From positions 1 to 64,000 of IMG/VR virus record IMGVR_UViG_3300028558_000791: a stretch of 64,000 nucleotides of DNA; one strand, written 5' to 3'. Positions 35,713 through 62,440 of the stretch are shown in pieces. The notes beneath the pieces are model-generated. The model worked only from the letters and a program-made list of their open reading frames with translations, ran no database searches and had not been told where the DNA came from. The stretch's first letter is position 1. Every line of letters starts with the position of its first letter. The translations under genes were made by a program, and so were the position numbers.

Positions 35713-35787
35713 GCGCAACTCGACGACATCGGCATGTTTCGTTTCAATTTGTTGGGACTATTTCCCAAATATGGAAGGTGTATTATT

Positions 35788-37419
35788 ATGTCAAACAAGA
35801 ACTTATTCTCAAACAAGAACAAGCTAACGGTATCTGTTTCTAAGAAGGTAACTCTGCCAACCAACACGGTTAATGAGGCAGGTGGAACTGCATATAAGCT
35901 GTCCGACAAGGCTGCTTTGGCGCAGTACGCCATGACTGGTACGTTCAACGGTACATACTATGCATCCGATGCAGATCAACTTAAGAAGGTCCTTGAGTTG
36001 GCAAACAAGGTAGATCCAAAGTTCGTCGCTAAGCTGGCAGTGTACGCACGCCAGAGAGGCTTGATGAAGGATATGCCTGCCGTTCTTGCAGCCGTCATTG
36101 CTGGAAGAGACGCTGACCTATTGGCTACGATTTTCGATAGAGTAATCGACAATCCAAAGATGCTTCGTAACTTCGTTCAGATCATCCGATCTGGCGCAAC
36201 TGGCCGTAAGTCCTTGGGAACTCGCCCAAAGAAGTTGGTACAGAAGTATCTTGAGAACTTGACCGACGAGCAGTTGTTCAAGGCTGATGTTGGTAACGAT
36301 CCGTCGTTGCAGGACATCATCAAGTTGGTTCACCCAAAGCCAACTAACAAGCAGCGTTCTGCGTTGTACGGTTACTTGCTCGACAAGGAGTACAACAAGA
36401 GAGACCTCGTGTCTTTGGCACAACAGTTCGAAGCATTCAAGAAGGATATGAAGGGAGAGATCCCAGATGTTCCGTTCCAGATGTTGACGGCTCTGCCATT
36501 GACTGATACGCACTGGAAGCAGATTGCTGAGAATGCAACCTGGAACCAGATCCGTATGAACCTCAATACGTTTGCTCGTCACAACGTATTGGCTGACAAG
36601 AAGCTGGTCGATGTTTTGGCAGCAAAGCTATCGGACCCAGAGCAGGTCAAGCGTTCCAAGACGTTCCCATATCAGTTGTTCACCACTTACTTGAACGTGG
36701 ACGCCACGATTCCAAGCAAGCTGACGAACGCATTGCAAGATGCGGCTGATTCTTCTTTGGATAACATTCCTGAGTTCCCAGGAAAGGTCTTCGTAATGGT
36801 TGACACTTCTGGTTCTATGGGCTCTGCCGTCACCGGTAAGAGAGTAAATCCAAAGACTGGTAAGGAGGAATCCTTTACGACTAAGGCTCGATGCGTAGAC
36901 GTGGCAGCACTTTTCGCAGCAGCAATCTTGCGCAAGAATCCAGACACTGAGATTGTGCCATTCGACACCTCAGTACATGTTGGTCACCGATTCAATCCAC
37001 GTGATTCGATCATGACCAATGCAAAGACTCTAGCTTCATTCGGTGGTGGTGGTACCAACTGCTCCGCTGCTTTGGAGTATGTCAACAAAAAGGCTGGCAA
37101 GGGCGACCTTGTCATCTACGTGTCTGACAATGAGTCATGGGTTGATACGAAGGCATCTAACTCAGGTGTGTTCGGATACTACCGCCGTAATGGCACTGCC
37201 ACTATGGAAGAGTGGAATAAGTTCGCAGCCCGTAACAAGGGTGCAAAGCTTGTCTGTATCGACATTCAACCAAACTCCTCCACCCAAGCACACGACAGGG
37301 ATGACATCCTGAACGTGGGAGGATTCAGTGACCAGGTGTTCGATGTAATCGCAAGATTCGCCGAGCTTGGAAACAACAAGGATCTCTGGATCAAGACGAT
37401 CGAAGACGTCAAACTCTAA
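35788..37419 (+). CDS. rsr: Ro60 / TROVE domain RNA-binding protein (Rsr) with vWA domain
   Basis: NEAGGTAY, TGTFNGTYY, LVHPKP, RMNLNTFARH, MIDAS VDTSGSM, GGGTNCS, VSDNESW. Confidence 0.93.
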   Translation: MSNKNLFSNKNKLTVSVSKKVTLPTNTVNEAGGTAYKLSDKAALAQYAMTGTFNGTYYASDADQLKKVLELANKVDPKFVAKLAVYARQRGLMKDMPAVLAAVIAGRDADLLATIFDRVIDNPKMLRNFVQIIRSGATGRKSLGTRPKKLVQKYLENLTDEQLFKADVGNDPSLQDIIKLVHPKPTNKQRSALYGYLLDKEYNKRDLVSLAQQFEAFKKDMKGEIPDVPFQMLTALPLTDTHWKQIAENATWNQIRMNLNTFARHNVLADKKLVDVLAAKLSDPEQVKRSKTFPYQLFTTYLNVDATIPSKLTNALQDAADSSLDNIPEFPGKVFVMVDTSGSMGSAVTGKRVNPKTGKEESFTTKARCVDVAALFAAAILRKNPDTEIVPFDTSVHVGHRFNPRDSIMTNAKTLASFGGGGTNCSAALEYVNKKAGKGDLVIYVSDNESWVDTKASNSGVFGYYRRNGTATMEEWNKFAARNKGAKLVCIDIQPNSSTQAHDRDDILNVGGFSDQVFDVIARFAELGNNKDLWIKTIEDVKL

Positions 37420-37492: not shown

Positions 37493-37494
37493 TC

Positions 37495-37911
37495 ATGAAT
37501 AAGTTAGAAGATTTAGTGGCGGCAGCAAGACTAGCCGCCCAACATTCGTACAGTCCATACAGCAACTTCAAAGTTGCATCCGCCGTAGAAATGGAAGATG
37601 GAAGCATCTTTAGCGGCTCTAATGTAGAGAATGCGTCTTACGGTCTCACTATCTGTGCAGAGCGCAACGCAATCTTTCAAGCTGTGTCTAAGGGACATCG
37701 CCTAATAAAACGTATCATTGTCTACGCTCCTTCACCAACTGTTCGTACTGGCCCTTGTGGAGCCTGTAGGCAGGTAATTAAAGAATTTGCCGATGAATAT
37801 ACACTAATCATTGGCGCCTGTAACTCAGACGATATATTAACTTTTACAATGGAAGATTTGTTACCAAAGAGTTTTGGTCCCGATAATCTTCTAAAGAAAA
37901 GAAACCAATGA
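37495..37911 (+). CDS. cdd: Cytidine deaminase
   Basis: YSPYS, NVENASYGLTICAER, PCGACRQ. Confidence 0.93.
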   Translation: MNKLEDLVAAARLAAQHSYSPYSNFKVASAVEMEDGSIFSGSNVENASYGLTICAERNAIFQAVSKGHRLIKRIIVYAPSPTVRTGPCGACRQVIKEFADEYTLIIGACNSDDILTFTMEDLLPKSFGPDNLLKKRNQ

Positions 37912-38753: not shown

Positions 38754-39315
38754 ACCAACCGGCCCAAAAGAGTTAGATTTGATTAAAAAGTCTAACTATA
38801 AGAAGTTCCCGCCCCGCTTGCCTGAACAACCAATTTTCTATCCAGTTCTTACAAAAGAGTATGCGGTAAAGATTGCACGAGATTGGAATGTAAAAGCTTC
38901 CGGAATAGGTTTTGTACTAGAATTCAAGGTCCGAAAGGATTTTCTAGACAAATATCCAGTGCAAGTAGCTGGCGGCAATTCTCATCAGGAGTATTGGATT
39001 CCAGCGGAAGAATTAGAAGACTTCAATCAAGCTCTAGTGGGCGAGATAAAGGTCACTGAGACGTACCAAGAGTGGTACATTTACATCCTAAAGTGTTCTG
39101 ATGGTACTTTGTACACAGGTATCACGAACAATCTGGGTAAACGAATCAAACAACATAACGAGGGTAAAGGCGCAAAGTACACGAAGGGTCGTGGTCCCGT
39201 TGCCCTTGTTAAGTTTTTCACCCGATTAACTAAGGGTGAAGCCCTGAAACTTGAATATCAGATCAAACAACTCTCTAAAGAAGAGAAACTGAATTACAAT
39301 GAGCAGAAGAGGTAA
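38719..39315 (+). CDS. Conserved LYRP..RLPEQPIFYPV domain fused to GIY-YIG nuclease
   Basis: C-terminal YIYILKCSDGTLYTGITNN..R..HN..GAKYT. Confidence 0.75.
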   Translation: MKRSKKSVTLYRPTGPKELDLIKKSNYKKFPPRLPEQPIFYPVLTKEYAVKIARDWNVKASGIGFVLEFKVRKDFLDKYPVQVAGGNSHQEYWIPAEELEDFNQALVGEIKVTETYQEWYIYILKCSDGTLYTGITNNLGKRIKQHNEGKGAKYTKGRGPVALVKFFTRLTKGEALKLEYQIKQLSKEEKLNYNEQKR

Positions 39316-39871
39316 AAAAAGTTTTAGTCCTCAATTTGAAAGAGACTACACTTTTTATCTGTCTAATAAAGATAACTTCACATTTGCTGGTTCAGATCTA
39401 AAATTACAATATCGTATTCAGTTTCCAGGAGAACCGGAACCAATTGGTAAGGATGAAGGGGGAAAGGACATTAATGTTCCATTCTCTATTCCTTACTCAG
39501 CAACTGGTAAAACTGCCAAGGTATGTTTCTATTCGCTAGATAGCGAAGGTAAATGTAAACCTTGTGCAGAACCGCAACTTCTAGTAGAAATTCTCACTTG
39601 TAAGGCCGCAATCAATCTACAGATTAAGATTTGGTCACAGAGTCGAGCCGAGTATACTTTATCCAAGATTGAGTTACAAGAATATCTTGATCACTATCAA
39701 GCTCCTGAATGGGTTTTCAAAGCGATTGAGAATCAAAAACTTAAGATTTTGAAGGAATGGAGCGCCGAAAAGCTTTATAAATCCGACTATTACAAGCGGG
39801 CTTATGAGCTTCATATGGGCGAATTTTTAGAAGAGATGCGTGGTTCCGGTGTTATATTAGATCCGAAATGA
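39299..39871 (+). CDS. Hypothetical protein
   Basis: Packed ORF. Confidence 0.55.
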   Translation: MSRRGKKSFSPQFERDYTFYLSNKDNFTFAGSDLKLQYRIQFPGEPEPIGKDEGGKDINVPFSIPYSATGKTAKVCFYSLDSEGKCKPCAEPQLLVEILTCKAAINLQIKIWSQSRAEYTLSKIELQEYLDHYQAPEWVFKAIENQKLKILKEWSAEKLYKSDYYKRAYELHMGEFLEEMRGSGVILDPK

Positions 39872-39893
39872 TCAAACACTGATTAGGAACATA

Positions 39894-40595
39894 ATGACCA
39901 AGGAAAACTTTACATCTATCAACGTAATCATCGACGCATCTGGCTCGATGTCTCACCTCACCCATGACACCATCGGGAACTTTAATACCTTCTTGCAAGA
40001 GCAAAAGGCATTCCCCGGTGAAGCTGTCTTCACTCTTTGTACTTTCAATACTGATTATCACTTGGTCCATGACTTCGTGAAGATTGCTGGTGTCCCTAGC
40101 TTGGATGCTAAGACCTATGTTCCACAAGGTGGAACCGCTTTGTTAGATGCTATGGGATCAACTATTGATTCTGTTGGTAAGAAGTTGGCCGCATTACCAG
40201 AAGAGGAACGTCCTTCTAAGGTTATTTTCCTCATCATCACTGATGGTCATGAAAACTCCAGTCGTCGTTTTGATGCGGCTCAAGTTAAGTCTATGGTCGA
40301 ACATCAGAAGGATACTTATAGTTGGGAGTTCGTATTCATGGGCGCTAACATTGATGCTATCTCTGCCGGCACCAACCTTGGTATCTCTATGCAGAACACT
40401 CTCAACTACGTTCCAAGTGCCGCTGGTACCGAGAATTTGTACAAGAGTATCAGTTCTAACGTAAGCAGCTATCGTGGCTCCAACTCTTCTAGAGTTGACT
40501 TTTTCAATCAGACTCAACAGGGCGTTGGCTCAGTTACTCCTCCAGTCGTAGTTACAACTACCACTACGGTAACTCCTCCAAAGACCTCAAAGTAA
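39894..40595 (+). CDS. von Willebrand factor A domain protein
   Basis: IIDASGSM, GGTALLDA, ITDGHENSS. Confidence 0.88.
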   Translation: MTKENFTSINVIIDASGSMSHLTHDTIGNFNTFLQEQKAFPGEAVFTLCTFNTDYHLVHDFVKIAGVPSLDAKTYVPQGGTALLDAMGSTIDSVGKKLAALPEEERPSKVIFLIITDGHENSSRRFDAAQVKSMVEHQKDTYSWEFVFMGANIDAISAGTNLGISMQNTLNYVPSAAGTENLYKSISSNVSSYRGSNSSRVDFFNQTQQGVGSVTPPVVVTTTTTVTPPKTSK

Positions 40596-40599
40596 TATC

Positions 40600-40806
40600 A
40601 TGTGTGCCGTTTCAGTTATCTATGACATGTTTGGTGGACAACCAGACGATTGGTATACGCTGGAACGTATTGATCTTTTCAAACGTATGGTGGCTGATGC
40701 TCGACTCTTCGATGAGGAGTCGGGCCAGCCCGATTGCGAAGACCCTGAAAAAACTAAAGTTACTGAACGCATTGAAAAAATCGAAGAAGAACTAGAGCAG
40801 AAGTAA
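40600..40806 (+). CDS. Hypothetical phage protein
   Basis: MCAVSVIYD...QPDCEDPEK. Confidence 0.55.
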   Translation: MCAVSVIYDMFGGQPDDWYTLERIDLFKRMVADARLFDEESGQPDCEDPEKTKVTERIEKIEEELEQK

Positions 40807-40807
40807 A

Positions 40808-41416
40808 ATGACTAAAGCATTATATGTTGGTAGTTTCGACCCTATCACCAACGGTCATATTGATATTATGAAGCGTAGCTTACAGTTCTGTAAGCAACTG
40901 GTGATTGGGATAGGTATCAATCCTAACAAGACTACTATGTTTGATGAGCGGGAGAGGAACTCCATGATTTTTCAAACGATAGTGAAGGAGTTTGACTTCC
41001 TTCATTCAACCAATACTTCGGTTGCTTCTTTTCAGGGACTTACAGTAGAGTATGCTAAAGAAATTGGTGCAACGATTCTAATTCGCGGAATTAGATCCGT
41101 TTCTGATTTCGAATATGAAATTAATTTGGCCAACATCAACAAGGTTCTGGCCCCATCAATTGAAACAATTTTCCTGCCCACCAGTCCTGATCTGGCGGTT
41201 GTCTCCTCTTCAATGGTAAAAGAAATTGCAAAGTTGAACGGAGATATTTCAAGATTCGTACCCAGCTATATTGCCGAGAGGATTCATTCAAAATTCGGTT
41301 TCTTCAAGCATGGCAAGACAGAGATTGGCACTGATACTATCAATAGATTACGAGAAGCTACAGTAGCTATTGAGAAAGAATTGGGAATCAAACCAAAAGA
41401 TGAGGGCGAAAAATAA
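40808..41416 (+). CDS. coaD: Phosphopantetheine adenylyltransferase
   Basis: GSFDPITNGH, IRGIRSVSDFEYE, VSSSMVKEIA. Confidence 0.92.
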   Translation: MTKALYVGSFDPITNGHIDIMKRSLQFCKQLVIGIGINPNKTTMFDERERNSMIFQTIVKEFDFLHSTNTSVASFQGLTVEYAKEIGATILIRGIRSVSDFEYEINLANINKVLAPSIETIFLPTSPDLAVVSSSMVKEIAKLNGDISRFVPSYIAERIHSKFGFFKHGKTEIGTDTINRLREATVAIEKELGIKPKDEGEK

Positions 41417-41430
41417 AAATTAGCGACGGG

Positions 41431-41458
41431 TTGACGAGCTAATTTTTAAGACTACAAT
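41431..41458 (+). promoter_or_regulatory. sigma70-like promoter of the RNA cluster
   Basis: TTGACG-N16-TACAAT. Confidence 0.55.
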
Positions 41459-41561
41459 GTTCGTTACTTCGGAGGCGCAAACCAAAGAATAATCAAAAAA
41501 GAATAGTGTGATAAAAATCTAGGCATAGCGTGATATAATACATACGATTCACCATTTTCAT

Positions 41562-41644
41562 GGGGGAGTAGCTCAGCGAAAGAGCGCAAGGATACCGTAA
41601 GGAAAACCTTGAGGTCCCTGGTTCAATTCCAGGCTCCCCCACCA
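41562..41644 (+). ncRNA. tRNA-like RNA with 15-nt anticodon loop
   Basis: Intact acceptor, D and T arms plus ACCA; CAAGG-ATACCGTAAGGAAAA-CCTTG. Confidence 0.85.
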
Positions 41645-41708
41645 TTTCAGTAGTTGTCTGAAAGTTTACCAAAGCATTAGCCTGGTATTACAATCAAAAC
41701 AACATTAT

Positions 41709-41784
41709 GGGACTGTAGCTCAGTGTTAGAGCGTCGGATTAAAAACCCGAAGGTCGCAGGTTCAACTCCTCGCCAGTCCCACCA
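41709..41784 (+). tRNA. Atypical tRNA, anticodon AAA (Phe)
   Basis: GGGACTG/CAGTCCC plus ACCA; loop TTAAAAA; bulged T stem. Confidence 0.7.
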
Positions 41785-41790
41785 TCTAAT

Positions 41791-41877
41791 CCCTCGTAAT
41801 TGGATCCGTGGGAGGATCTCCGGTCTGTAAAACCGGCGCCAATGTGCTAGGTAGTTCGATTCTACTGCGGGGGACCA
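41791..41877 (+). tRNA. 8/4-fold tRNA (allo-tRNA/Sec-like), anticodon GTA
   Basis: 8-bp acceptor CCCTCGTA/TGCGGGGG, 4-bp T stem, 6-bp D stem, CCGGT-CTGTAAA-ACCGG. Confidence 0.75.
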
Positions 41878-41967
41878 AACTGTAAGAGGAGCTTCGGCTC
41901 CAGTATTTATGCGGTACAAACCAACTAAGTATTTACAGTCTGTTCAATGACAACTTAATATTTGTTT

Positions 41968-42044
41968 CGGGGACTGGCTCAACCTGGTAGAGCGTCTGTT
42001 TTGGGTACAGAAGGTTGCGAGTTCAAATCTCGCGTCCCCGACCA
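41968..42044 (+). tRNA. tRNA-Pro(TGG)
   Basis: Canonical cloverleaf, C1-G72, A73. Confidence 0.95.
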
Positions 42045-42047
42045 TAT

Positions 42048-42081
42048 CCTTCTTTTTGGGTTAAACCGAAGAGAGGGGCCA
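42048..42081 (+). ncRNA. Minihelix: 12-bp hairpin plus G-CCA
   Basis: CCTTCTTTTTGG-GTTAAA-CCGAAGAGAGGG-G-CCA. Confidence 0.6.
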
Positions 42082-42084
42082 TAA

Positions 42085-42159
42085 GCCTCTGTAGCTCAAG
42101 AAACAGAGCGTCGTCCGTTGAGGACGATGATGTAGGTGTAAAGCCTACTGGAGGCTCCA
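42085..42159 (+). tRNA. Atypical tRNA (loop CG-TTG-AG, T-loop TGTAAAG)
   Basis: All four stems pair; G33; T-CCA end. Confidence 0.7.
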
Positions 42160-42168
42160 TGTTACTAT

Positions 42169-42245
42169 GCCACTACTAGCTCAATTGGTTAGAGCACTGG
42201 ATTGTGGATCCGGGGGTTTCGGTTCGATTCCGAAGTTTGGTACCA
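42169..42245 (+). tRNA. tRNA-His(GTG)-like, imperfect acceptor
   Basis: CTGGA-TTGTGGA-TCCGG; lacks C73. Confidence 0.75.
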
Positions 42246-42353
42246 TGACGAATGTCCGAGTAGGATTACATTTTTATGCAAAAAAACCGATGGGGTTCGA
42301 TTCCCCTTTAGGGCTGGCGCCAGGCAAAACATCTTATTCATTTCTTGTCGTCA
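42246..42353 (+). ncRNA. Y RNA-like 1 (T-arm cargo)
   Basis: TGACGA-ATG..GAGTAGGAT-TACA / ATCTTATTC..TTG-TCGTCA; internal GGGG-TTCGATT-CCCC. Confidence 0.8.
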
Positions 42354-42355
42354 AT

Positions 42356-42432
42356 CAGAGAATGTTGTTTAATGGTTAGCATCCGTGCCCTGGAAGCATG
42401 TGGTCCCGGTTCGAATCCGGGTTCTCTGACCA
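42356..42432 (+). tRNA. tRNA-Pro(TGG), atypical loop
   Basis: CAGAGAA/TTCTCTG plus ACCA; CGTGC-CCTGGAA-GCATG. Confidence 0.75.
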
Positions 42433-42503
42433 ATGCCAGTATATCTGGAAACTAATGAAGAACATTATTGGTAGTTCTGTTCTCGATGAAGTTTCTTGCT
42501 GGT

Positions 42504-42619
42504 CATACCGAATGAGCTTTAAGAGCTACTCAGTCTTAATAAATAAGTGCATGGGATAGCTACCTTAAAAATAACCGTTATAGTTAAGGCTCATAAGGAA
42601 ACACAATTTTGTCGGTATG
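42504..42619 (+). ncRNA. Y RNA-like 2 (divergent)
   Basis: CATACCGA-ATG / TTTTG-TCGGTATG; second helix GAGCTTTAA/TTAAGGCTC; lacks GGATTACA. Confidence 0.6.
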
Positions 42620-42623
42620 TTTT

Positions 42624-42724
42624 TGGGATACATTAAGTTGGTAATCATTACGATTCTGGTTCGAGTGGTAGGAACACAAATCGGAAACGTAAGTGAGAAG
42701 GTTCGAATCCTTCTGTCCTGACCA
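42624..42724 (+). ncRNA. tRNA-like RNA with long replaced anticodon arm
   Basis: TGGGATA/TGTCCTG plus ACCA; GAAGG-TTCGAAT-CCTTC; arm TTAC-GATT..AATC..GTAA. Confidence 0.7.
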
Positions 42725-42727
42725 AAT

Positions 42728-42801
42728 GACTTTGTGGACAAATTATTAAGTCACTCCCGTTAGAGGGAGAGATGTAAGTGCAAGGCTTGCCAAGGTCACC
42801 A
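42728..42801 (+). ncRNA. tRNA-like RNA with 6-nt anticodon loop (GTTAGA)
   Basis: GACTTTG/CAAGGTC plus ACCA; CTCCC/GGGAG; T-loop TGCAAGG. Confidence 0.7.
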
Positions 42802-42802
42802 T

Positions 42803-43019
42803 GTAACAAATGCCCCGAGAGGATTACATTCATTAGGAGAACGAGGTCGTGGGTCCGAGTCCCACCACTGCTACCATCCCAAAGCACGTCATTAAATTGA
42901 AGGGACACTCGAAAGAGTGATGTTGCCTGACTTACTTAGCGAAAGCTATCTAAGTCCTCATAGCAGTGTAGCTCAGTTGGCAGAGCGCGAAAAACATCTT
43001 TTCAAATTTTTGTTGTTAC
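42803..43019 (+). ncRNA. Y RNA-like 3 containing a circularly permuted tRNA with internal CCA
   Basis: GTAACAA-ATG..GAGAGGAT-TACA / ATCTTTTC..TTG-TTGTTAC; T arm plus CACTGCT-A-CCA precedes AGCAGTG plus D arm. Confidence 0.85.
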
Positions 43020-43022
43020 TAT

Positions 43023-43056
43023 CTCCGCTGTAGGGTCAAACCTAAAGCGGGGACCA
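43023..43056 (+). ncRNA. Minihelix: 12-position hairpin plus A-CCA
   Basis: CTCCGCTGTAGG-GTCAAA-CCTAAAGCGGGG-A-CCA. Confidence 0.6.
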
Positions 43057-43348
43057 AAAGACCAATCGTATCGGTCTTTATGAGAGAGATACATTCCTCT
43101 CAAAAGCATCTAGTGGTCGTCCGTTATCACTGGAGCTAAATAGTTAGCGGGCAGTATTCAGGGTTTGCTCCAGCCGAATTATGAATACTATTATTGAGAT
43201 TAAATTTGTTGGGGGCGTATTCGGTTGCGCTTGATATTCCGAAACTCTAATGGGAGTGAATATAGTTCCATTGTAACACTCAGCTATAACGATTAAGTAA
43301 CTCAGAGTGTTGCGCTTTACTAGCAATAACAATGCATAGTATATGTAT

Positions 43349-43422
43349 TCCGAGGTCGTTCAACGGTAGGACGGGTCGCTGTTAACGACTCTATATTGGT
43401 TCGATTCCAGTCCTCGGAGCCA
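43349..43422 (+). tRNA. tRNA-Asn(GTT)
   Basis: Canonical; G73-CCA. Confidence 0.95.
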
Positions 43423-43428
43423 GAATAT

Positions 43429-43515
43429 TCTGTGGTAGCCTAATGGTAAGGCAGGTGGCTGTTAACCACCCGGTGGTAAAACACTTTCTAGGTTCGAGTC
43501 CTAGCTGCAGAGCCA
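43429..43515 (+). tRNA. tRNA-Asn(GTT) with long variable arm
   Basis: GGTGG-CTGTTAA-CCACC; V-arm GGTG-GTAAAA-CACT. Confidence 0.85.
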
Positions 43516-43624
43516 AATAATACGGGGATTGATTAGACCGAAATGATCCGTATTAGCTGTTATGTTTGGTCAATTCTGCATAACGACAGAAGCTATGTCC
43601 AGTAAAATGGAGTCGTCTTCTGAA

Positions 43625-43880
43625 GATGAATGCCGATAAGGATTACACTAATACAACCGAGCCTCACGCCGTAGAATGCCCGCAAGGATTTCATTCCACA
43701 AATACCGGGTGGCTCACATCTCCCACTACATTACAAGAGATGATGAAAATTAAACTGAGATGTCTGACAAGCCTGCCTACCAGTTAGAGTAACAGGCTCA
43801 GTGGTGTAACTGATAATACACTGTGATTACTTGTTTACTTGTAAACAAAATAATTGCTATCTTTATCAACTTTAGTCATC
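43625..43880 (+). ncRNA. Y RNA-like 4 (large unknown cargo)
   Basis: GATGA-ATG..GATAAGGAT-TACA / ATCTTTATC..TAG-TCATC. Confidence 0.7.
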
Positions 43881-43887
43881 AAAATAT

Positions 43888-43962
43888 TCTGCTCTAGTGT
43901 AATTAGCACGGCGATCTCTTTGTAGGTCGAGGGTCATGGTTTAAGTCCATGGGGCGGAGCCA
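43888..43962 (+). ncRNA. tRNA-like RNA (Gln-like T1-A72, G73) with irregular anticodon arm
   Basis: TCTGCTC/GGGCGGA plus GCCA; CGATCT-CTTTGT-AGGTCG. Confidence 0.65.
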
Positions 43963-43982
43963 AAGCAAATCATGAGAAAGCA

Positions 43983-44411
43983 ATGTTTACTTCAACCGGA
44001 ATCCTTCAATATGATCCTGGTCAGGGTCTAAAACATTTCGATCCATGGTGGGCTCTTCTAGCCTGTGACGATGAAGTATCTAGGTATTATGCCTGGTTAC
44101 TAAAGAGACACGGAGTAGAAGTCTACCCTAACGATAAAGGGTTGTGGGGAACACACGTTTCAGTTTTGAAAGGTGCCGTCCCTCCCAATCAAGATAAGTG
44201 GGGCAAGTATCAAGACTTCGAAGTAGAAATCCATCTCAATCATCTTGTCCGTTATGATAACGGGAAACATGCTTGGGTAGATGTATACTCAGAAGATTTA
44301 TCAGCAATCCGACAGGAGTTAGGCTTCGATGCCAAGCCCTGGTACCATCTGACAATTGGTAGGTTGGTGAGACCATTTGATGTGGACTTTACCAAATATG
44401 GCATAACCTGA
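43983..44411 (+). CDS. 2H phosphoesterase family protein
   Basis: Two HxS/T motifs (THVSV, YHLTI) about 65 aa apart. Confidence 0.7.
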   Translation: MFTSTGILQYDPGQGLKHFDPWWALLACDDEVSRYYAWLLKRHGVEVYPNDKGLWGTHVSVLKGAVPPNQDKWGKYQDFEVEIHLNHLVRYDNGKHAWVDVYSEDLSAIRQELGFDAKPWYHLTIGRLVRPFDVDFTKYGIT

Positions 44412-44427
44412 TATATAATCAGCACAT

Positions 44428-44502
44428 ACCCTCGTACGCATCGGGTGAGGCGGGAAGCTTGTCAAGCTTTTGAGGGCGGTTCGAGTCCGCTCGGGGGTGC
44501 CA
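44428..44502 (+). tRNA. tRNA-Asp(GTC)
   Basis: GAAGC-TTGTCAA-GCTTT; G73-CCA. Confidence 0.85.
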
Positions 44503-44569
44503 AAGTCAAATGCCTTGATAGGATTACATTTTACCAAAAGAAAACATCTTATCTACTTTTTGTTGACTT
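44503..44569 (+). ncRNA. Y RNA-like 5 (minimal, stem only)
   Basis: AAGTCAA-ATG..GATAGGAT-TACA / AAAC-ATCTTATC..TTG-TTGACTT. Confidence 0.8.
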
Positions 44570-44572
44570 TTT

Positions 44573-44666
44573 CGATCACGCGTAGCTGGTTGCTCGGGCG
44601 AGACTTATAATCTTGCAAGGACTGATATTCCGTAACGGCAGGGTTCGATTCCCTGGTGATCGACCA
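44573..44666 (+). tRNA. Atypical tRNA-Ile(TAT), 6-bp anticodon stem, long variable region
   Basis: CGATCAC/GTGATCG plus ACCA; GCGAGA-CTTATAA-TCTTGC. Confidence 0.75.
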
Positions 44667-44669
44667 TAT

Positions 44670-44746
44670 GGCACTGTAGCCCAAAGGCAGGAGGCACCTG
44701 ACTTAAAATCAGTTCAGTGTGGGTTCAAATCCCACCAGTGCTACCA
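44670..44746 (+). tRNA. tRNA-Leu(TAA) with short variable loop
   Basis: CTGA-CTTAAAA-TCAG; no type II arm. Confidence 0.85.
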
Positions 44747-44765
44747 ATAAAGATATAGTTAATAT

Positions 44766-44841
44766 GGAACTTGAGCAAGTATGGTTATTGCATCGGTCTG
44801 AAAAGCCGACAAACGGGGTTCGATCCCCCGAGGTTCCACCA
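44766..44841 (+). tRNA. tRNA-Phe(GAA)
   Basis: TCGGT-CTGAAAA-GCCGA; ACCA. Confidence 0.9.
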
Positions 44842-44842
44842 A

Positions 44843-45193
44843 ATGAGAATTGTTCAAAAGCCTTGGGGCCATGAAGAAATCTGGGCAGAAACTCCCAACT
44901 ATGTTGGAAAAGTTCTCTCAATCAATCCTGGTCACAGACTCTCAAGACAATATCATAATCTCAAAGAAGAAACATTCAGAGTTCTTTTTGGGACGTTGAC
45001 GCTAGAAATAGGTGAGGGTGACGATATAGTTACTCACGTATTAACGGCAGGTCAAACTTTTCACTGTCCTCCAAAGACAGTTCATAGAATGATTTGCCAA
45101 CGAGTTATCAACTATGCACCAGTAAATGTATTGGAAGTATCAACCAATCATTTAGATGATGTAGTAAGATTAGAAGACGATTATAAAAGATAA
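44843..45193 (+). CDS. Cupin domain protein (mannose-6-phosphate isomerase C-terminal-like)
   Basis: KPWG, LSRQYH..KEE, HR, DDVVRLEDDY. Confidence 0.85.
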   Translation: MRIVQKPWGHEEIWAETPNYVGKVLSINPGHRLSRQYHNLKEETFRVLFGTLTLEIGEGDDIVTHVLTAGQTFHCPPKTVHRMICQRVINYAPVNVLEVSTNHLDDVVRLEDDYKR

Positions 45194-45270
45194 CGTGCTA
45201 TAGCTCAGTTGGTTAGAGTGCCTCTCTGATAAGGAGGAAGTCCCAGGTTCGAATCCCGGTAGCACGACCA
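45194..45270 (+). tRNA. tRNA-Ile(GAT)
   Basis: Canonical cloverleaf. Confidence 0.92.
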
Positions 45271-45481
45271 GTAACGAATGCAGTTAGGATTACATCCATA
45301 ACGACCTTAAAGTAGTTGACAGAGCCGCGAGGCGCTGAATCGATGGCAACAAAACGATCACCAGGTAATGCTGAGGTCCATCAGACTCTTGAGTCGAAGT
45401 TGCGGGGCGAACGGGAAGTATCTCGAAAGAGACTTTCAATGTGCCGGTCACACCCAGTATCTTAGCAATTTTTGTCGTTAT
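45271..45481 (+). ncRNA. Y RNA-like 6 (large unknown cargo)
   Basis: GTAACGA-ATG..GTTAGGAT-TACA / ATCTTAGC..TTG-TCGTTAT. Confidence 0.78.
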
Positions 45482-45485
45482 ACAT

Positions 45486-45561
45486 GGGACGGTAGCTCAG
45501 TGGTTAGAGCGCAACGCTGATAACGTTGAAGTCGATGGTTCGATTCCATCTCGTCCTACCA
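45486..45561 (+). tRNA. tRNA-Ile(GAT)
   Basis: Canonical cloverleaf. Confidence 0.95.
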
Positions 45562-45697
45562 ATGGCAAGCCATTAAAGCCCTTCCTTCTATAATTAATTG
45601 ATAAAACAGGACTTTTGCTTTCTTGCCAGATGATATTACATTTATGGCCCCACGCTTTAGTGGGTCACCATAAATAATAAATGAAGGTCGCACCTTC

Positions 45698-45786
45698 AGC
45701 CTGCCCACATGGATGGAAACTGTGGCGTCACCTTGGTAAACCAAGTAGTAAAGTGACAAGCCTGCCCACATGGTTGGAAACTGTGG
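45698..45786 (+). repeat. 28-nt direct repeat x2 with 33-nt hairpin spacer
   Basis: AGCCTGCCCACATGGWTGGAAACTGTGG at 45698 and 45759. Confidence 0.85.
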
Positions 45787-45789
45787 AAA

Positions 45790-45866
45790 GAATCGTTTAG
45801 CTCAATGGTAGAGCGTGGTCACTAGTGACGACTAAGATGCGGGTTCGATTCCCGTAATGATTCCCA
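45790..45866 (+). ncRNA. His-like tRNA (G-1:C73) with 9-nt anticodon loop
   Basis: GAATCGTT/AATGATTC-CCA; TGGTC-ACTAGTGAC-GACTA. Confidence 0.75.
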
Positions 45867-45894
45867 AGGGGACAACATTGTTGCTCCCTCAATC

Positions 45895-46048
45895 GAGGCA
45901 AATGCACCGAAGGTTTACATTTGGAATAATCATATCGTCGTAAGACGGTCGCAGGTTCGAATCCTGCAACTTCCGAAAGGAAGTTTGGCTGAGTGGTCTA
46001 AAGCAATGATGCTGAAAAGCATGCTAACTTTCAAATTTTTGTTGCTTC
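45895..46048 (+). ncRNA. yrlA: Y RNA-like 7, classical YrlA architecture
   Basis: GAGGCAA-ATG / TTG-TTGCTTC; T arm GCAGG-TTCGAAT-CCTGC, acceptor AACTTCC-GAAA-GGAAGTT, then D arm. Confidence 0.85.
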
Positions 46049-46050
46049 AT

Positions 46051-46179
46051 CTCCCGCTAGTTTAAAACGAAACACTTGTTATAGAGGACGTATACTTAAT
46101 CTATGATGAGCAAGTAGTAGAGCAAAACACCTCCACGCTAAGGAGGAGATTGCGAGTGCAAGTCTCGCAAGGGAGACCA
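46051..46179 (+). ncRNA. tRNA-like RNA with ~50-nt hairpin inserted in the D loop
   Basis: CTCCC/GGGAG plus ACCA; CCTCC-ACGCTAA-GGAGG; GCGAG-TGCAAGT-CTCGC. Confidence 0.7.
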
Positions 46180-46184: not shown

Positions 46185-46511
46185 ATGAACCAAGACAAGC
46201 CGACAATGAAGGACCTGAAAGAAGGTCCGCCATTACTTTGTCCTATCTGTGATAGACCAAACTACTTCCCTTCAGACCATCACATGGTTCCGAAGTCAAG
46301 AGGCGGCAAGTCTACTGAAACGATCTGTGAAGATTGCCACAAAGCAATCCATGCACACTTCACCAATAAAGAATTGGAAGAAACGTATCATACGCCAGAA
46401 GCTTTGTTAGCTCATGAAGGTTTTGCCAAACAGATTAAATTTCTATCGAAACAAGATCCCGGCGGCAGATCGAAAACTAAAAAGAATAAAGATCGTCTAA
46501 GACGAGAATAA
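46185..46511 (+). CDS. HNH endonuclease
   Basis: CPIC, DHHMVPKSRGG, CEDCHKAIH. Confidence 0.85.
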   Translation: MNQDKPTMKDLKEGPPLLCPICDRPNYFPSDHHMVPKSRGGKSTETICEDCHKAIHAHFTNKELEETYHTPEALLAHEGFAKQIKFLSKQDPGGRSKTKKNKDRLRRE

Positions 46512-50072: not shown

Positions 50073-50149
50073 GGGTCTTTTGATGTAAAGGCTGGCCTCT
50101 AGACTTTAGTGCTAGAGGACATCGGGTTCGACTCCCGAATGATCCGCCA
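50073..50149 (+). ncRNA. tRNA-like RNA, no D stem, loop CT-TTA-GT
   Basis: GGGTC/GATCC plus GCCA; CCTCTAG/CTAGAGG; TCGGG-TTCGACT-CCCGA. Confidence 0.65.
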
Positions 50150-51877: not shown

Positions 51878-52288
51878 TTGGATCCTTTAGCAAAACTTAT
51901 ACTCAACGCCCTTAAGTGTCCCATCTGTCAGTCTAGATTAGACTTACTCGATTGGAAAGACCACATACCAGGACCCAAGTATAATTTCACTTGCTCTTCT
52001 AATTGGGAGCACTATCGTATCTTCTTTGTACATTGGGAACCAGTGTGCAGAGTTGAATACGAAACAGTAATTGTTTACGAAGGTAAACACCAATATCGAA
52101 TAACTCAGTATGGTATGCCTGACCGTACTGAGATTTTTATTCATGATGTCGATGCCGAAAATCGAATCATTGATAACCGTAGTAAAACCAATAATAAGTT
52201 TTCCTATGAGAAAAAGCTTTTTGATTTCGCAAATACTACTCGCGAAAAAGTTGTGAATAGAGTTAGAACCATTCTGGTTTTCTCGTAA
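51878..52288 (+). CDS. Hypothetical protein
   Basis: CPIC motif. Confidence 0.5.
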   Translation: MDPLAKLILNALKCPICQSRLDLLDWKDHIPGPKYNFTCSSNWEHYRIFFVHWEPVCRVEYETVIVYEGKHQYRITQYGMPDRTEIFIHDVDAENRIIDNRSKTNNKFSYEKKLFDFANTTREKVVNRVRTILVFS

Positions 52289-56566: not shown

Positions 56567-56898
56567 ACATGAGCTTAGCTTGGTCAAAGGATATGGAATT
56601 GGATCCTGGTACGTTTGGAGGTTCTCCGGCATGCCATGTTTTAGTAGATATGATGAATCACAATGTTATTCCTATTATAGAGAAGCATCGTGTTTTATCA
56701 TTCATCAATGATGCTATCTATCAATTCAAGTGGTTATCCACTGTGAAGGAGTATGGCGTCAAGGAGAGGTCTATGGTTCTGATGAGGGACGATATTCTAT
56801 CTAGGGTGGATCATATGCCATATCCTGCCAAGTTTAATTCACATCTGAAGAACGTGATAACTCACCACTTCAGACGATACTTGAAAGAAGAGACCTAG
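56563..56898 (+). CDS. Hypothetical protein
   Basis: Packed ORF. Confidence 0.5.
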   Translation: MNMSLAWSKDMELDPGTFGGSPACHVLVDMMNHNVIPIIEKHRVLSFINDAIYQFKWLSTVKEYGVKERSMVLMRDDILSRVDHMPYPAKFNSHLKNVITHHFRRYLKEET

Positions 56899-57250
56899 AC
56901 AATCGCTCCCGTAAGGAGAGGAAAGTCGGAGCTACGTAGGGCAATTTGCTGGCTAACGGCCAGGCGCAGTGATGCGACAGATAGTGCAACAGAAAAGAAA
57001 CCGCCATGAATCCGCCAGGCCCGAAAGGGAGCAACGGTAGATGGTAAGGGTGAAATGGTGGGGTAAGAGCCCACCGCACCTATAGTGATATAGGTGGCAA
57101 GGTAAACCTCAGATGTAGCAAGCTAAATAGAGAGTGACTTGTCCGGTCAATACTCTCGGGTTAGTGCTGGAGCCATTAGGTAACTAACGGCCAAGATTAA
57201 TGATTGTCTCGATTTATAGACAGGACTCCGCTTATAGGGTGTCTTCTTTC
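56883..57250 (+). ncRNA. rnpB: RNase P RNA, bacterial type A
   Basis: GAGGAAAGTCGGAG, AGTGCAACAGAAA, GGGTGAAA..GGTAAGAG, GGTAAACC, ACAGGACTCCGCTTA; P1 GAAAGAAGA/TCTTCTTTC. Confidence 0.93.
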
Positions 57251-62434: not shown

Positions 62435-62440
62435 AAACAA

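What the first reader, a model, noticed from the sequence alone, without database searches (positions are those of the whole stretch)
41562..46179. tRNA punctuation: Y RNAs abut tRNA or tRNA-like elements
Seen: Y-like RNAs start 0-1 nt after a CCA (42246, 42803, 44503, 45271) and all seven end within about 2-7 nt of the 5' end of a tRNA, tRNA-like RNA or minihelix. Known: mitochondrial polycistrons are cut by tRNA punctuation. Inference: tRNA processing releases these ncRNAs from one long transcript, which would explain why anticodon-defective tRNA-like elements keep intact acceptor/T arms and CCA.
Basis: inference. Interest (0 to 1): 0.75.

Follow-up and report, generated by a model that had tools for sequence, protein, structure and literature searches.

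The report
Y RNAs punctuated by tRNAs in phage
A 480-kb soil phage packs seven Ro60-type Y RNAs between tRNAs and tRNA look-alikes so tightly that tRNA-processing enzymes, including the phage's own RNase P RNA, most likely cut them out of one long transcript.

Summary
Between 42246 and 46048 lie seven Y-like RNAs. Each has a 7-bp closing stem, a CGAAUGC loop, a second stem, UACAU, and AAUUUUUG on the 3' side.

- **5' ends:** four start 0-1 nt after an encoded CCA (P about 1e-5 against random placement).
- **3' ends:** all seven end 1-6 nt before a tRNA, a non-decoding tRNA-like element or a minihelix (0 of 300,000 random placements).
- **Elsewhere:** an eighth copy at 76 kb and related phage contigs follow the same grammar. 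Pooled over 25 Y RNAs, 16 start at a CCA and 23 end just before a tRNA(-like) element.

These are Y RNAs. A Ro60 gene lies 4.8 kb upstream, and the same RNA family sits directly beside Ro60 genes in other phages and in two bacterial MAGs. The stems covary.

The punctuation reading is well supported by architecture:
- one sigma70-like promoter and no terminator inside the array;
- ORFs that also abut tRNAs;
- a shared A(-2)U(-1) leader before tRNAs and tRNA-likes;
- a phage-encoded class A RNase P RNA.

No RNA end data exist. The enzyme that cuts at the CCA|Y junction is unknown. Tandem Y arrays in more distant phages have no tRNAs at all. I rate it a new variant of known kinds.

The parts
35734..37419 (+). 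Ro60/Rsr ortholog, the presumed protein partner of the Y RNAs
   Evidence: Pfam vWA_Ro60 9e-14 and TROVE 3e-09, both above cut-off. 52% identical to the Myxococcus phage Mx1 TROVE protein. Sigma70-like site at 35684 just upstream.
41431..41458 (+). Sigma70-like promoter (TTGACG-16-TACAAT) at the head of the array
   Evidence: 10 of 12 consensus matches. It is the only TTGAC-N16-18-TAnnnT site on the + strand between 35684 and 47049. The block 41408-41470 is 89% conserved in L070.
41562..42245 (+). Six leading tRNA and tRNA-like elements, all with encoded CCA: 41562-41644, 41709-41784, 41791-41877, 41968-42044, 42085-42159, 42172-42245
   Evidence: ARAGORN and Rfam tRNA hits. Scan for T arm + acceptor + CCA. 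Folds.
42246..42353 (+). Y1: starts 0 nt after CCA and ends 2 nt before the tRNA-Pro-like element 42356-42432; holds a T-arm-like hairpin
   Evidence: Fold, detector. Ortholog in L070 at 1483-1588 between tRNA-Glu and tRNA-Pro.
42504..42619 (+). Y1b: divergent Y-like RNA that ends 4 nt before the tRNA-like element 42624-42724
   Evidence: 8-bp closing stem CAUACCGA/UCGGUAUG, with the CGAAUG and AAUUUUG motifs; fold z = -2.3.
42728..42801 (+). Non-decoding tRNA-like element (6-nt anticodon loop) with CCA, directly before Y2
   Evidence: ARAGORN reports tRNA-??? with a 2-base anticodon. Fold.
42803..43019 (+). Y2: YrlA-type Y RNA with a permuted tRNA-like module, in the order T arm, acceptor 3' strand, CCA at 42874-42876, 82-nt insert, acceptor 5' strand, D arm
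   Evidence: Fold and T-arm/CCA scan. A relative in run X30 has a 9-nt loop in place of 42877-42958.
43023..43057 (+). Minihelix: 7-bp acceptor-like stem, 4-bp T-like stem, ACCA. The minimal RNase P substrate shape, 3 nt after Y2
   Evidence: Fold -17.8 kcal/mol, z = -4.7. The stem is kept by compensatory changes in L070. L002 has a full tRNA-like element at that place.
43621..43881 (+). Y3: ends 6 nt before the tRNA-like element 43888-43962
   Evidence: Detector, fold, tRNA-like fold.
44428..44502 (+). tRNA-Asp(GUC), whose CCA directly abuts Y4
   Evidence: ARAGORN. Rfam tRNA 40 bits.
44503..44569 (+). Y4: minimal 67-nt Y RNA (Ro-binding stem only), 0 nt after CCA and 3 nt before the tRNA at 44573
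   Evidence: Fold z = -2.1. Weak Rfam YrlB hit, 22 bits. Ortholog in L070 at 3812-3882 in the same setting.
44573..44841 (+). tRNA-Ile(UAU)-like with a long variable arm, tRNA-Leu(UAA) and tRNA-Phe(GAA), spaced 3 and 19 nt apart
44846..45193 (+). Cupin ORF punctuated by tRNAs: ATG 4 nt after the CCA of tRNA-Phe, stop codon abutting tRNA-Ile at 45194
   Evidence: ORF list. Pfam Cupin_2 and MannoseP_isomer. Coordinates read.
45194..45270 (+). tRNA-Ile(GAU), whose CCA directly abuts Y5
   Evidence: Rfam tRNA 66 bits.
45271..45481 (+). Y5: 0 nt after CCA and 4 nt before tRNA-Ile(GAU) 45486-45561
   Evidence: Fold, detector.
45895..46048 (+). Y7: canonical YrlA-type RNA in the order variable-arm hairpin, T arm, acceptor stem closed by GAAA, D arm. 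Ends 1 nt before the tRNA-like element 46050-46179
   Evidence: Fold z = -2.6. Rfam YrlA 24 bits, below gathering. tRNA-like fold.
56887..57250 (+). Phage-encoded bacterial class A RNase P RNA
   Evidence: 272.5 bits, full length 1-367. The conserved core blocks GAGGAAAGUC and ACAG.AC...GCUUA, and the GGU of the CGGGU motif that I take to be the P15 loop, are kept. Also present in relatives G001 and G007.
52104..52132 (+). First strong intrinsic-terminator-like site downstream on the + strand
   Evidence: 11-bp stem followed by a U tract.

Best explanation
**Setting.** The window is the start of a 480-kb soil or rhizosphere phage genome. Positions 41.4-46.2 kb, and probably on to the terminator at 52.1 kb, form one transcription unit. 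It is driven by a host-type promoter at 41431.

**Content.** The unit is a string of structured RNAs:
- decoding tRNAs;
- non-decoding tRNA-like elements and a minihelix;
- seven Y RNAs, which are partners of the Ro60 protein encoded at 35734-37419;
- two or three small ORFs.

**Proposed processing.**
1. RNase P is formed by the phage's own RNA subunit (56887-57250) and presumably the host protein subunit. It cuts at the 5' side of every acceptor-stem element.
2. Each cut frees the Y RNA lying upstream, leaving a 1-6-nt 3' tail.
3. A second endonucleolytic cut right after the encoded CCA frees the upstream tRNA with a usable 3' end. It also gives the Y RNA a flush 5' end.

The tRNA-likes that have lost a working anticodon loop keep the acceptor stem, the T arm, the CCA and the AU leader. 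That is exactly what RNase P reads, so they act at least in part as punctuation marks.

**Shown:** the anatomy, the spacing, its conservation, the Ro60 link, and the RNase P RNA.
**Inferred:** co-transcription, the RNase P cuts, the enzyme acting at CCA|Y, and the punctuation-only role of the tRNA-likes.
For: 1. **Spacing.** 4 of 7 Y starts lie 0-1 nt after a CCA. 7 of 7 Y ends lie 1-6 nt before an acceptor-stem element. Random placement gives P about 1e-5 and fewer than 1 in 300,000.
2. **Eighth copy.** The genome's eighth Y RNA (76352-76474) lies between two tRNA-Gly genes, with gaps of 0 and 3 nt.
3. **Same grammar in relatives.** It recurs in L070, L002, L003 and L034. One example is L002: tRNA-Met | Y | 8 nt | tRNA | 0 nt | Y | 6 nt | tRNA-Tyr. 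Pooling these loci with the window's eight, 16 of 25 Y RNAs start 0-1 nt after a CCA, and 23 of 25 end within 10 nt of a tRNA(-like) start.
4. **Cassette behaviour.** Y cassettes are present or absent exactly at tRNA borders. A 62-nt Y lies between a tRNA and tRNA-Tyr in L070 and L002, where the window has a 6-nt spacer. Homology to L070 starts at the CCA|Y1 border although the upstream tRNA differs.
5. **Element after the Y2 ortholog.** It is a minihelix in the window and L070 and a 76-nt tRNA-like element in L002. Only the acceptor-type stem is common, and it is kept by compensatory changes.
6. **Leader signature.** Across the phage's 57 tRNAs, -1 is U in 38 and -2 is A in 44, and 55 encode CCA. 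17 of 21 elements that follow a Y RNA also have U at -1. The N-1 contact with A248 and the pairing of RCCA with the GGU of the P15 loop are known RNase P determinants (PMC11143913). That GGU is kept in the phage RNase P RNA.
7. **Transcription signals.** One sigma70-like promoter lies at the head. No TTGAC-N16-18-TAnnnT site lies inside 41562-46179. No convincing + strand terminator appears before 52104. Gaps of 0-1 nt leave no room for separate promoters.
8. **ORFs.** ORFs abut tRNAs too: the cupin ORF with gaps of 4 and 0 nt, and the HNH ORF with a gap of 5 nt.
9. **A cut at CCA is required.** tRNA-Asp(GUC) and tRNA-Ile(GAU) upstream of Y4 and Y5 score as normal tRNAs and need a free CCA end.
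10. **RNase P RNA tracks the interleaved layout.** It is present in the three interleaved genomes (window, G001, G007). It is absent from the two phages with tandem Y arrays and no tRNAs, G002 (complete) and G003.
11. **Y RNA identity.**
   - The Ro60 gene lies upstream on the same strand.
   - The family follows Ro60 by 73 nt in G002.
   - Among 120 bacterial pattern hits, only two loci hold well-formed copies, and both carry a Ro60 gene. In L195 the two copies start about 155 nt after it.
   - 36 members show stem positions 92-100% paired with 3-7 pair types.
   - RNAalifold finds double changes in 6 of 7 stem-1 pairs.
   - The motif CGAAUG fits the published GNCGAAN0-1G box (PMC4201824).
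Against: - **No RNA-level data.** The four RNA-type runs I laid held only short contigs of relatives and gave no ends.
- **The 5' cut is unexplained.** RNase P does not obviously account for the cut between CCA and the Y 5' end. The phage encodes no RNase Z-type, RNase E/G or RnpA protein, so host enzymes must be assumed.
- **Not all starts abut a CCA.** Three of the seven Y RNAs start 28-105 nt after the previous CCA, so another 5' maturation step is needed for them.
- **Other routes exist.** In G002 and G003 the same Y family is arrayed with U-rich 10-11-nt spacers and no tRNAs.
- **Weak promoter and terminator evidence.** The scans use consensus matching only, and promoter-like sites are not enriched. 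Weak sites (9 of 12) exist in the spacers at 41665 and 41932.
- **Partly circular covariation.** The Y detector required pairing, so the counts are not independent of it.
Confidence: 0.6

Rival explanations
1. The adjacency reflects how the array evolves, not how the Y RNAs are matured. Structured-RNA cassettes are inserted, lost and swapped at element borders in a tightly packed array. Other nucleases mature the Y RNAs: cuts in U-rich tails, then exonuclease trimming back to the Ro60-protected stem. The tRNA-likes have jobs of their own, for example as decoys for tRNA-targeting host defences, as substrates for CCA-adding or repair enzymes, or as Ro60 effector modules.
For: Tandem Y arrays with U-rich 10-11-nt spacers and no tRNAs occur in G002 and G003. 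Module borders are mosaic. HNH and GIY-YIG endonuclease genes lie in and near the array. The neighbourhood is an RNA-repair and NAD island, with an RNA ligase, a 2H phosphoesterase-like protein, PARG and an ADP-ribosylglycohydrolase.
Against: Packing alone does not explain why other spacers in the same array are 40-290 nt long while the Y 3' gaps are always 1-6 nt. It does not explain the shared AU leader before tRNA-likes. It does not explain why only the acceptor-type stem survives after the Y2 ortholog. Any tRNA(-like) element with this shape would be cut by RNase P anyway, so this rival largely overlaps with the main model.
Confidence: 0.25
2. tRNA-Y or Y-tRNA chimeras are the functional molecules. 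The junctions are not cut, and the flanking tRNA serves as the tRNA-like module that YrlA carries internally.
For: Y4 is a bare Ro-binding stem without any tRNA-like module and is flanked by tRNAs on both sides. Known bacterial Y RNAs couple a Ro-binding stem to a tRNA-like domain (PMC4201824).
Against: In YrlA the tRNA-like domain is joined through the anticodon-stem side, not through the CCA end. Y2 and Y7 already carry such internal modules. tRNA-Asp(GUC), the only tRNA-Asp that ARAGORN finds in the genome, would be useless without a free CCA end.
Confidence: 0.07
3. Each Y RNA is an independent gene with its own promoter and terminator.
For: Weak sigma70-like matches (9 of 12) exist in some spacers and inside Y3. 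Some Y RNAs end in U-rich tails, such as Y4 with UUU.
Against: Gaps of 0-1 nt after CCA would put the promoters inside tRNA genes. Promoter-like sites are not enriched (26 found against 23 expected). No TTGAC-type site lies inside the array. No terminator-like site follows any Y RNA.
Confidence: 0.05

Closest known systems
Mitochondrial tRNA punctuation (Ojala-Montoya-Attardi model; cited in PMC8601606)
   Same: Long polycistronic transcripts in which tRNAs flank the other genes with 0 to a few nt of spacer. Excising the tRNAs releases the neighbours. ORFs directly abut tRNAs here too.
   Different: This is a bacterial virus with a bacterial class A ribozyme RNase P. The CCA is encoded. The released products are Ro60-type Y RNAs. 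Many of the punctuation marks are non-decoding tRNA-likes or a minihelix.
Bacterial and phage Y RNAs YrlA/YrlB with Rsr/Ro60 (Chen et al. 2014, PMC4201824; Thermus phage phiLo Yrl1/2, PMC12135203)
   Same: They are encoded near Ro60 on the same strand. The 5' and 3' ends form a stem with a CGAA-type box. Y2 and Y7 carry permuted tRNA-like modules with T and D arms. M. smegmatis YrlA is itself cut by RNase P and receives CCA.
   Different: This is a divergent sequence family: Rfam YrlA and YrlB score 22-27 bits against cut-offs of 69 and 97. There are seven or eight copies per genome. They are interleaved base-to-base with tRNAs, which the papers I could reach do not describe.
Phage T4 tRNA cluster with dimeric tRNA precursors (PMC11143913) and its co-transcribed stable 'species 1 and 2' RNAs (from my own knowledge, not checked here)
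   Same: A phage tRNA cluster is transcribed as multi-gene precursors that RNase P resolves. Non-tRNA stable RNAs ride in the same cluster.
   Different: T4 relies on host RNase P, has eight tRNAs and no Ro60. Its extra RNAs are not Y RNAs.
MALAT1-mascRNA and MEN-beta tRNA-like 3'-end processing (own knowledge; Rfam family RF01684 gave only weak hits on true tRNAs here)
   Same: A non-decoding tRNA-like structure is placed right after a non-coding RNA, so that RNase P cleavage creates that RNA's 3' end.
   Different: That system is eukaryotic and nuclear, with a single element per transcript, and has no sequence relation to this one.
RNase P-only separation of polycistronic tRNA operons in E. 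coli (own knowledge: Mohanty and Kushner 2007)
   Same: Short spacers, with RNase P cuts at each downstream tRNA defining the upstream 3' ends.
   Different: Only tRNAs are involved, with no interleaved Y RNAs or tRNA-like marks.

Membership tests
Y RNA (bacterial YrlA/YrlB type) | Encoded near a Ro60/Rsr gene on the same strand | tested here: met
   Ro60 lies at 35734-37419. The first Y RNA is 4.8 kb downstream on the same strand. The same family starts 73 nt after Ro60 in G002. Both bacterial loci with well-formed copies carry a Ro60 gene.
Y RNA (bacterial YrlA/YrlB type) | 5' and 3' ends pair into a stem that carries the conserved Ro-binding box (GNCGAAN0-1G / CGAA) | tested here: met
   36 members share NNNN(C/U)(G/A)A-AUGC ... 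UUG-U(C/U)(G/A)NNNN with covarying stems. Y1 reads GACGAAUG, an exact match. Others read CAAAUG or UGAAUG.
Y RNA (bacterial YrlA/YrlB type) | tRNA-like module (T arm, D arm, acceptor-like stem) in at least one Y RNA per genome | tested here: met
   Y7 holds a T arm, an acceptor stem closed by GAAA, and a D arm. Y2 has the same with an insert. Y1 holds a T-arm hairpin.
Y RNA (bacterial YrlA/YrlB type) | Reaches the Rfam gathering score for YrlA (69 bits) or YrlB (97 bits) | tested here: not met
   The best scores are 24.2 bits (YrlA, Y7), 22.3 bits (YrlB, Y4) and 27 bits (YrlB, L002). This is a divergent family, not a member of the curated models.
Y RNA (bacterial YrlA/YrlB type) | Physically bound by Ro60 | not testable with these tools
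   This needs a pull-down or gel-shift assay with the protein of 35734-37419.
tRNA punctuation | Non-tRNA products flanked by tRNA(-like) structures with almost no spacer | tested here: met
   Gaps are 0-1 nt at four of seven 5' ends and 1-6 nt at all seven 3' ends, far beyond chance. ORFs also abut tRNAs.
tRNA punctuation | All elements lie on one primary transcript | tested here: inconclusive
   One promoter-like site lies at the head, none of that type inside, and no terminator before 52104. These are consensus scans only, without RNA data.
tRNA punctuation | Mature ends are created by tRNA 5' and 3' processing enzymes | not testable with these tools
   Only indirect evidence exists: the AU leader and encoded CCA on tRNA-likes and the phage RNase P RNA with an intact core.
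Bacterial RNase P RNA class A | Full-length match above the Rfam gathering score with the conserved catalytic core | tested here: met
   272.5 bits against a cut-off of 100, covering model positions 1-367. The conserved core blocks and the GGU I take to be that of the P15 loop are present.

The most novel reading that the evidence does not exclude
A virus carries a self-supplied, mitochondria-like punctuation system. Its own RNase P ribozyme works with a set of non-decoding tRNA-likes and a minihelix that survive only as cleavage signals. One transcript is thereby cut into tRNAs, a family of Ro60-binding Y RNAs, and near-leaderless mRNAs. A further step is possible: the 7-bp closing stem of the Y RNAs may mimic an acceptor stem. 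RNase P would then also make the cut at the CCA|Y junction.
Probability: 0.35. Interest if true: 0.8.

Novelty: new variant of a known kind. Interest (0 to 1): 0.64.

Why it matters
How bacterial and phage Y RNAs get their ends is poorly known. Why phages carry Ro60 at all is also unsettled. Here the genome itself suggests a maturation route that can be tested with a few hundred bases of RNA and RNase P.

If it holds, three things follow:
- tRNA punctuation is not confined to organelles.
- It explains why "broken" tRNA genes are kept in phage tRNA arrays, where they are usually dismissed as pseudogenes.
- It gives a reason for a phage to encode its own RNase P RNA.

It also defines a new and easily recognised Y RNA family: 36 copies in nine phage contigs here, plus copies in two bacterial MAG loci. 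The curated Rfam models miss this family.

Tried and rejected
- **Rfam.** At gathering thresholds Rfam finds no Y RNA in the window. The YrlA and YrlB hits are sub-threshold. One YrlA "hit" at 43372-43475 is just the tRNA-Asn pair.
- **RNA evidence.** The RNA run search gave only runs holding 15% or less of the sampled words. I laid four runs (X25, X28, X30, X47). They gave contigs of relatives, no ends, and no proof of transcription.
- **Pattern scans.** Most hits of the 5' motif in viral and bacterial collections are chance matches. Only loci with a paired 3' strand were kept.
- **Rejected candidates.** The site at 50926 forms only a short hairpin. Detector hits at 2894, 49743 and similar places lack the conserved loops.
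- **Myxococcus phage Mx1.** It has the closest Ro60 among cultured phages, but no member of this Y family within 9 kb of that gene.
- **No cultured relative.** No cultured phage shares the array at DNA level; only tRNAs match.
- **Covariance model.** I did not build one, because MAFFT misaligned the second stem. The stems were counted by script instead.
- **Phage enzymes.** Searches of the phage genome for RnpA, RNase Z-type metallo-beta-lactamase, RtcB and RNase E/G were all negative.
- **Literature.** Searches found no report of tRNA-punctuated Y RNAs or of a phage-encoded RNase P RNA. Two Wolin-lab reviews were not held.

Full report
**What the window is.**
- The window is the first 64 kb of a single 480,838-bp virus record.
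- The runs that hold its DNA are soil and rhizosphere metagenomes.
- Nearly all ORFs are on the + strand.
- IMG/VR labels the record a provirus and CheckV rates it 100% complete.
- The genome carries 57 tRNA genes and a tmRNA.
- The window alone has 29 ARAGORN tRNAs and a full-length bacterial class A RNase P RNA at 56887-57250, scoring 272.5 bits.
- A Ro60/Rsr ortholog with TROVE and Ro60-type vWA domains lies at 35734-37419.
- Its closest cultured relative is the TROVE protein of Myxococcus phage Mx1, at 52% identity.

**The observation.** Reading the sequence and folding it shows seven RNAs with one plan.
- A 7-bp closing stem is made by the two ends.
- An internal loop reads AUGC(N1-4) on the 5' side and (N)AAUUUUUG on the 3' side.
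- A second stem of about 8 bp ends in AGGAU, followed by UACAU.
- A variable inner part follows.

The seven are Y1 42246-42353, Y1b 42504-42619 (divergent), Y2 42803-43019, Y3 43621-43881, Y4 44503-44569, Y5 45271-45481 and Y7 45895-46048.
- Four begin 0 or 1 nt after an encoded CCA. The CCA triplets are at 42243-45, 42799-801, 44500-02 and 45268-70.
- All seven end 2, 4, 3, 6, 3, 4 and 1 nt before the first base of an acceptor-stem element.
- I placed the RNAs at random, only within the free space between tRNAs. That gave four or more CCA-abutting starts in 4 of 300,000 trials, and seven close ends in none.

**The flanking elements.** A scan for T arm + 7-nt acceptor strand + N + CCA found 19 such modules in 41.4-46.4 kb. 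Several cannot decode:
- 42085-42159 has a 7-bp anticodon stem with a 5-nt loop.
- 42728-42801 has a 6-nt loop.
- 43888-43962 has a 6- or 8-nt loop.
- 41562-41644 has an expanded anticodon arm.
- 46050-46179 has a large insert.
- 43023-43057 is a bare minihelix: 7-bp acceptor-like stem, 4-bp T-like stem, then ACCA.

All of them keep the acceptor stem, a T-type hairpin and CCA. Of the seven elements that follow a Y RNA, the two at 42356 and 44573 are atypical tRNAs. Only the one at 45486 is a high-scoring canonical tRNA.

**Are these Y RNAs?**
- *Against:* Rfam's curated YrlA and YrlB models give only 22-27 bits. These RNAs are not members of those models.
- *Family and covariation:* The same motif and fold recur 36 times in nine phage contigs. 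The outer stem positions vary freely but stay paired. Stem 1 positions 2-7 are 92-100% paired with 3-7 pair types per position, and stem 2 behaves likewise. RNAalifold, run on 12 short members, recovers stem 1 with double compensatory changes in 6 of 7 pairs.
- *Published box:* The conserved CGAAUG matches the published Ro-binding box GNCGAAN0-1G (PMC4201824) and the "CGAA motif" of the Thermus phage phiLo Yrl RNAs (PMC12135203).
- *tRNA-like modules:* Y7 and Y2 contain the circularly permuted tRNA-like module that defines YrlA. The order is T arm, acceptor 3' strand, closing loop, acceptor 5' strand, D arm.
- *Link to Ro60:* Four of five other phage records with the family encode Ro60. In the complete 190-kb phage G002, four tandem copies start 73 nt after the Ro60 stop. 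Of 120 bacterial-genome hits to the 5' motif, only two loci hold well-formed copies, and both carry a Ro60 gene at 48-52% identity. In L195 the two copies start about 155 nt after that gene.

I therefore treat these RNAs as a new, divergent Y RNA family.

**Comparative evidence for punctuation.** Relatives with Ro60 at 67-81% identity carry syntenic arrays (L002, L003, and L070 from the 359-kb record G001). The grammar is the same in them:
- L070: tRNA-Glu | Y | 4 nt | tRNA-Pro, and tRNA-Asp | Y | 4 nt | tRNA-Ile.
- L002: tRNA-Met | Y | 8 nt | tRNA | 0 nt | Y | 6 nt | tRNA-Tyr.
- L034: tRNA-Gly | Y.
- The genome's eighth copy, at 76352-76474, lies between two tRNA-Gly genes with gaps of 0 and 3 nt.

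Pooled over these loci and the window's eight, 16 of 25 Y RNAs start 0-1 nt after a CCA. 23 of 25 end within 10 nt of a tRNA(-like) start.

The cassettes behave as modules.
- A 62-nt Y sits between a tRNA and tRNA-Tyr in L070 and L002, where the window has a 6-nt spacer.
- Homology between the window and L070 begins exactly at the CCA|Y1 border although the upstream tRNA differs.
- The element after the Y2 ortholog is a minihelix in the window and L070 but a 76-nt tRNA-like element in L002. Only the acceptor-type stem is shared, and it is maintained by compensatory changes.

This is what is expected if selection acts on an RNase P substrate rather than on a decoder.

**Signals for RNase P.**
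- Across the phage's 57 tRNAs the leader is strongly biased. Position -1 is U in 38 and position -2 is A in 44, against a genome composition of 27% T and 29% A.
- 55 of the 57 encode CCA.
- The elements that follow Y RNAs share this: 17 of 21 have U at -1.
- Three RNase P determinants are established (PMC11143913): the N-1 contact with A248, the pairing of RCCA with the GGU of the P15 loop, and the 12-bp acceptor/T stack.
- The phage RNase P RNA keeps the conserved core blocks and the GGU of the CGGGU motif, which I take to be the P15 loop.
- Its close relatives G001 and G007 have an RNase P RNA too. The complete phage G002 and the partial G003, which carry tandem Y arrays without tRNAs, do not. 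The sample is small but the pattern is consistent.
- The phage has no RnpA protein, so it would borrow the host's.
- It does encode two CCA-adding/poly(A) polymerase-family enzymes.

**One transcript?**
- A TTGACG-16-TACAAT site lies at 41431-41458. It sits in a block that is 89% conserved in L070.
- Sites of the same type precede Ro60 (35684) and the later tRNA blocks (47049, 49378). None lies inside 41562-46179.
- No convincing + strand terminator occurs before 52104.
- Junctions of 0-1 nt leave no room for promoters.
- ORFs are punctuated as well. The cupin ORF starts 4 nt after the CCA of tRNA-Phe, and its stop codon touches tRNA-Ile at 45194. The HNH ORF starts 5 nt after the CCA at 46179.

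This is suggestive but rests on consensus scans only.

**What is not explained.**
- RNase P accounts for the Y 3' ends. The cut between CCA and the first Y nucleotide is required, because tRNA-Asp(GUC) and tRNA-Ile(GAU) need a free CCA end. Its enzyme is unknown.
- The phage encodes no RNase Z-type, RNase E/G or RtcB protein.
- I see two candidates. One is a host RNase Z/BN-type or RNase E cut. The other is RNase P acting on the Y closing stem as an acceptor-stem mimic, as it does on hairpin substrates such as pre-4.5S RNA (PMC11143913). I could not discriminate between them.
- Three Y RNAs (Y1b, Y3, Y7) start 28-105 nt after the previous CCA, behind small hairpins, and need yet another step.
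- The tandem, tRNA-free arrays of G002 and G003, with U-rich 10-11-nt spacers, show that the family can be matured in other ways.

**Direct RNA evidence.**
- None was found. RNA-type runs hold at most 15% of the sampled words.
- The four runs I laid gave short contigs of relatives with no end information.
- They did show that relatives' homology often starts exactly at Y borders (44503, 45270, 45894).
- They also showed that a Y2 relative has a 9-nt loop where the window has the 82-nt insert at 42877-42958.

**Comparison and novelty.**
- Y RNAs and Ro60 in phages are known (PMC4201824, PMC12135203, PMC7824862).
- tRNA punctuation is known from mitochondria (PMC8601606).
- RNase P-resolved multi-gene precursors are known from phage T4 (PMC11143913).
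- tRNA-like 3'-end signals are known from MALAT1 (my own knowledge).
- I could not find, in the papers I could reach, Y RNAs interleaved base-to-base with tRNAs and non-decoding tRNA-likes in a phage that also encodes RNase P RNA.

I rate it a new variant of known kinds. My confidence that tRNA processing releases these Y RNAs is about 0.6. My confidence that the tRNA-likes persist mainly as punctuation is lower.

Noticed in passing
window 56887-57250; also G001:C1:36384-36715 and G007:C1:17389-17879: The phage encodes a full-length bacterial class A RNase P RNA (272 bits) with an intact conserved core. It has no RnpA protein gene. Close relatives have the RNA too. I found no report of a phage-encoded RNase P RNA in the papers searched.
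   Followed up: partly
window 42849-42966 (inside Y2): The permuted tRNA-like module of Y2 has an 8-bp acceptor stem, an encoded CCA (42874-42876) and then an 82-nt insert before the 5' acceptor strand. RNase P and 3' trimming could split Y2 into two base-paired halves, as reported for M. smegmatis YrlA. A relative in run X30 has a 9-nt loop instead of the insert.
   Followed up: partly
window 44846-45193, 46185-46511, 43983-44411: Protein genes inside the array are also bounded by tRNA(-like) elements. The gaps are 4 and 0 nt for the cupin ORF, 5 and 5 nt for the HNH ORF, and 20 and 16 nt for the third ORF. If the tRNAs are excised, the mRNAs would be nearly leaderless, and no Shine-Dalgarno sequence fits in the 4-nt leader.
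   Followed up: partly
window 50073-50149; G000 172924-172997 and 173183-173255; G000 170047-170403: There are suppressor-type tRNAs: one with anticodon UUA (reads UAA) and two with CUA (reads UAG). There is also a tmRNA with the tag ANDNAFAMAA. ORFs in the window read normally under code 11, so I did not assume recoding.
   Followed up: no
window 45699-45725 and 45760-45786: A 27-nt direct repeat (GCCTGCCCACATGGxTGGAAACTGTGG, one mismatch) occurs in the 229-nt spacer between tRNA-Ile and tRNA-Thr. Each copy can form a CCACA...UGUGG hairpin. Its function is unknown.
   Followed up: no
whole genome (57 tRNAs): There is a strong leader consensus A(-2)U(-1) before tRNA position +1 (44 and 38 of 57), and CCA is encoded in 55 of 57. 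This suggests the whole tRNA set is tuned to one RNase P.
   Followed up: yes
window 34206-41416 and 57963-63676: The array sits in an RNA-repair and NAD/ADP-ribose neighbourhood. The genes are a nucleoside deoxyribosyltransferase-NUDIX fusion, a PARG-like protein, an NMNAT-like cytidylyltransferase, a 2H phosphoesterase-like ORF (weak hit), an RNA ligase and an ADP-ribosylglycohydrolase.
   Followed up: partly
L055 6308-6896 (= L127 3097-3685), L107 (- strand) 5572-5845: In more distant Ro60 phages the same Y family forms tandem arrays of three or four copies. They are separated by U-rich 10-11-nt spacers, with no tRNAs between them and no RNase P RNA in the genome. The last L107 copy ends in a run of eight U.
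   Followed up: partly
L195 1628-1896 (Algimonas MAG) and L247: Two bacterial MAG contigs carry one or two Y RNAs of this family together with a Ro60 gene (48-52% identical to the phage protein). In L195 the Y RNAs start about 155 nt after the gene. I did not check whether these loci are prophages.
   Followed up: no
window 42172-42245: The tRNA-His-like element (anticodon GUG, Rfam 46.5 bits) that precedes Y1 has a poor acceptor stem, with about 4-5 pairs in the best fold. ARAGORN misses it. In L070 a tRNA-Glu takes its place.
   Followed up: partly
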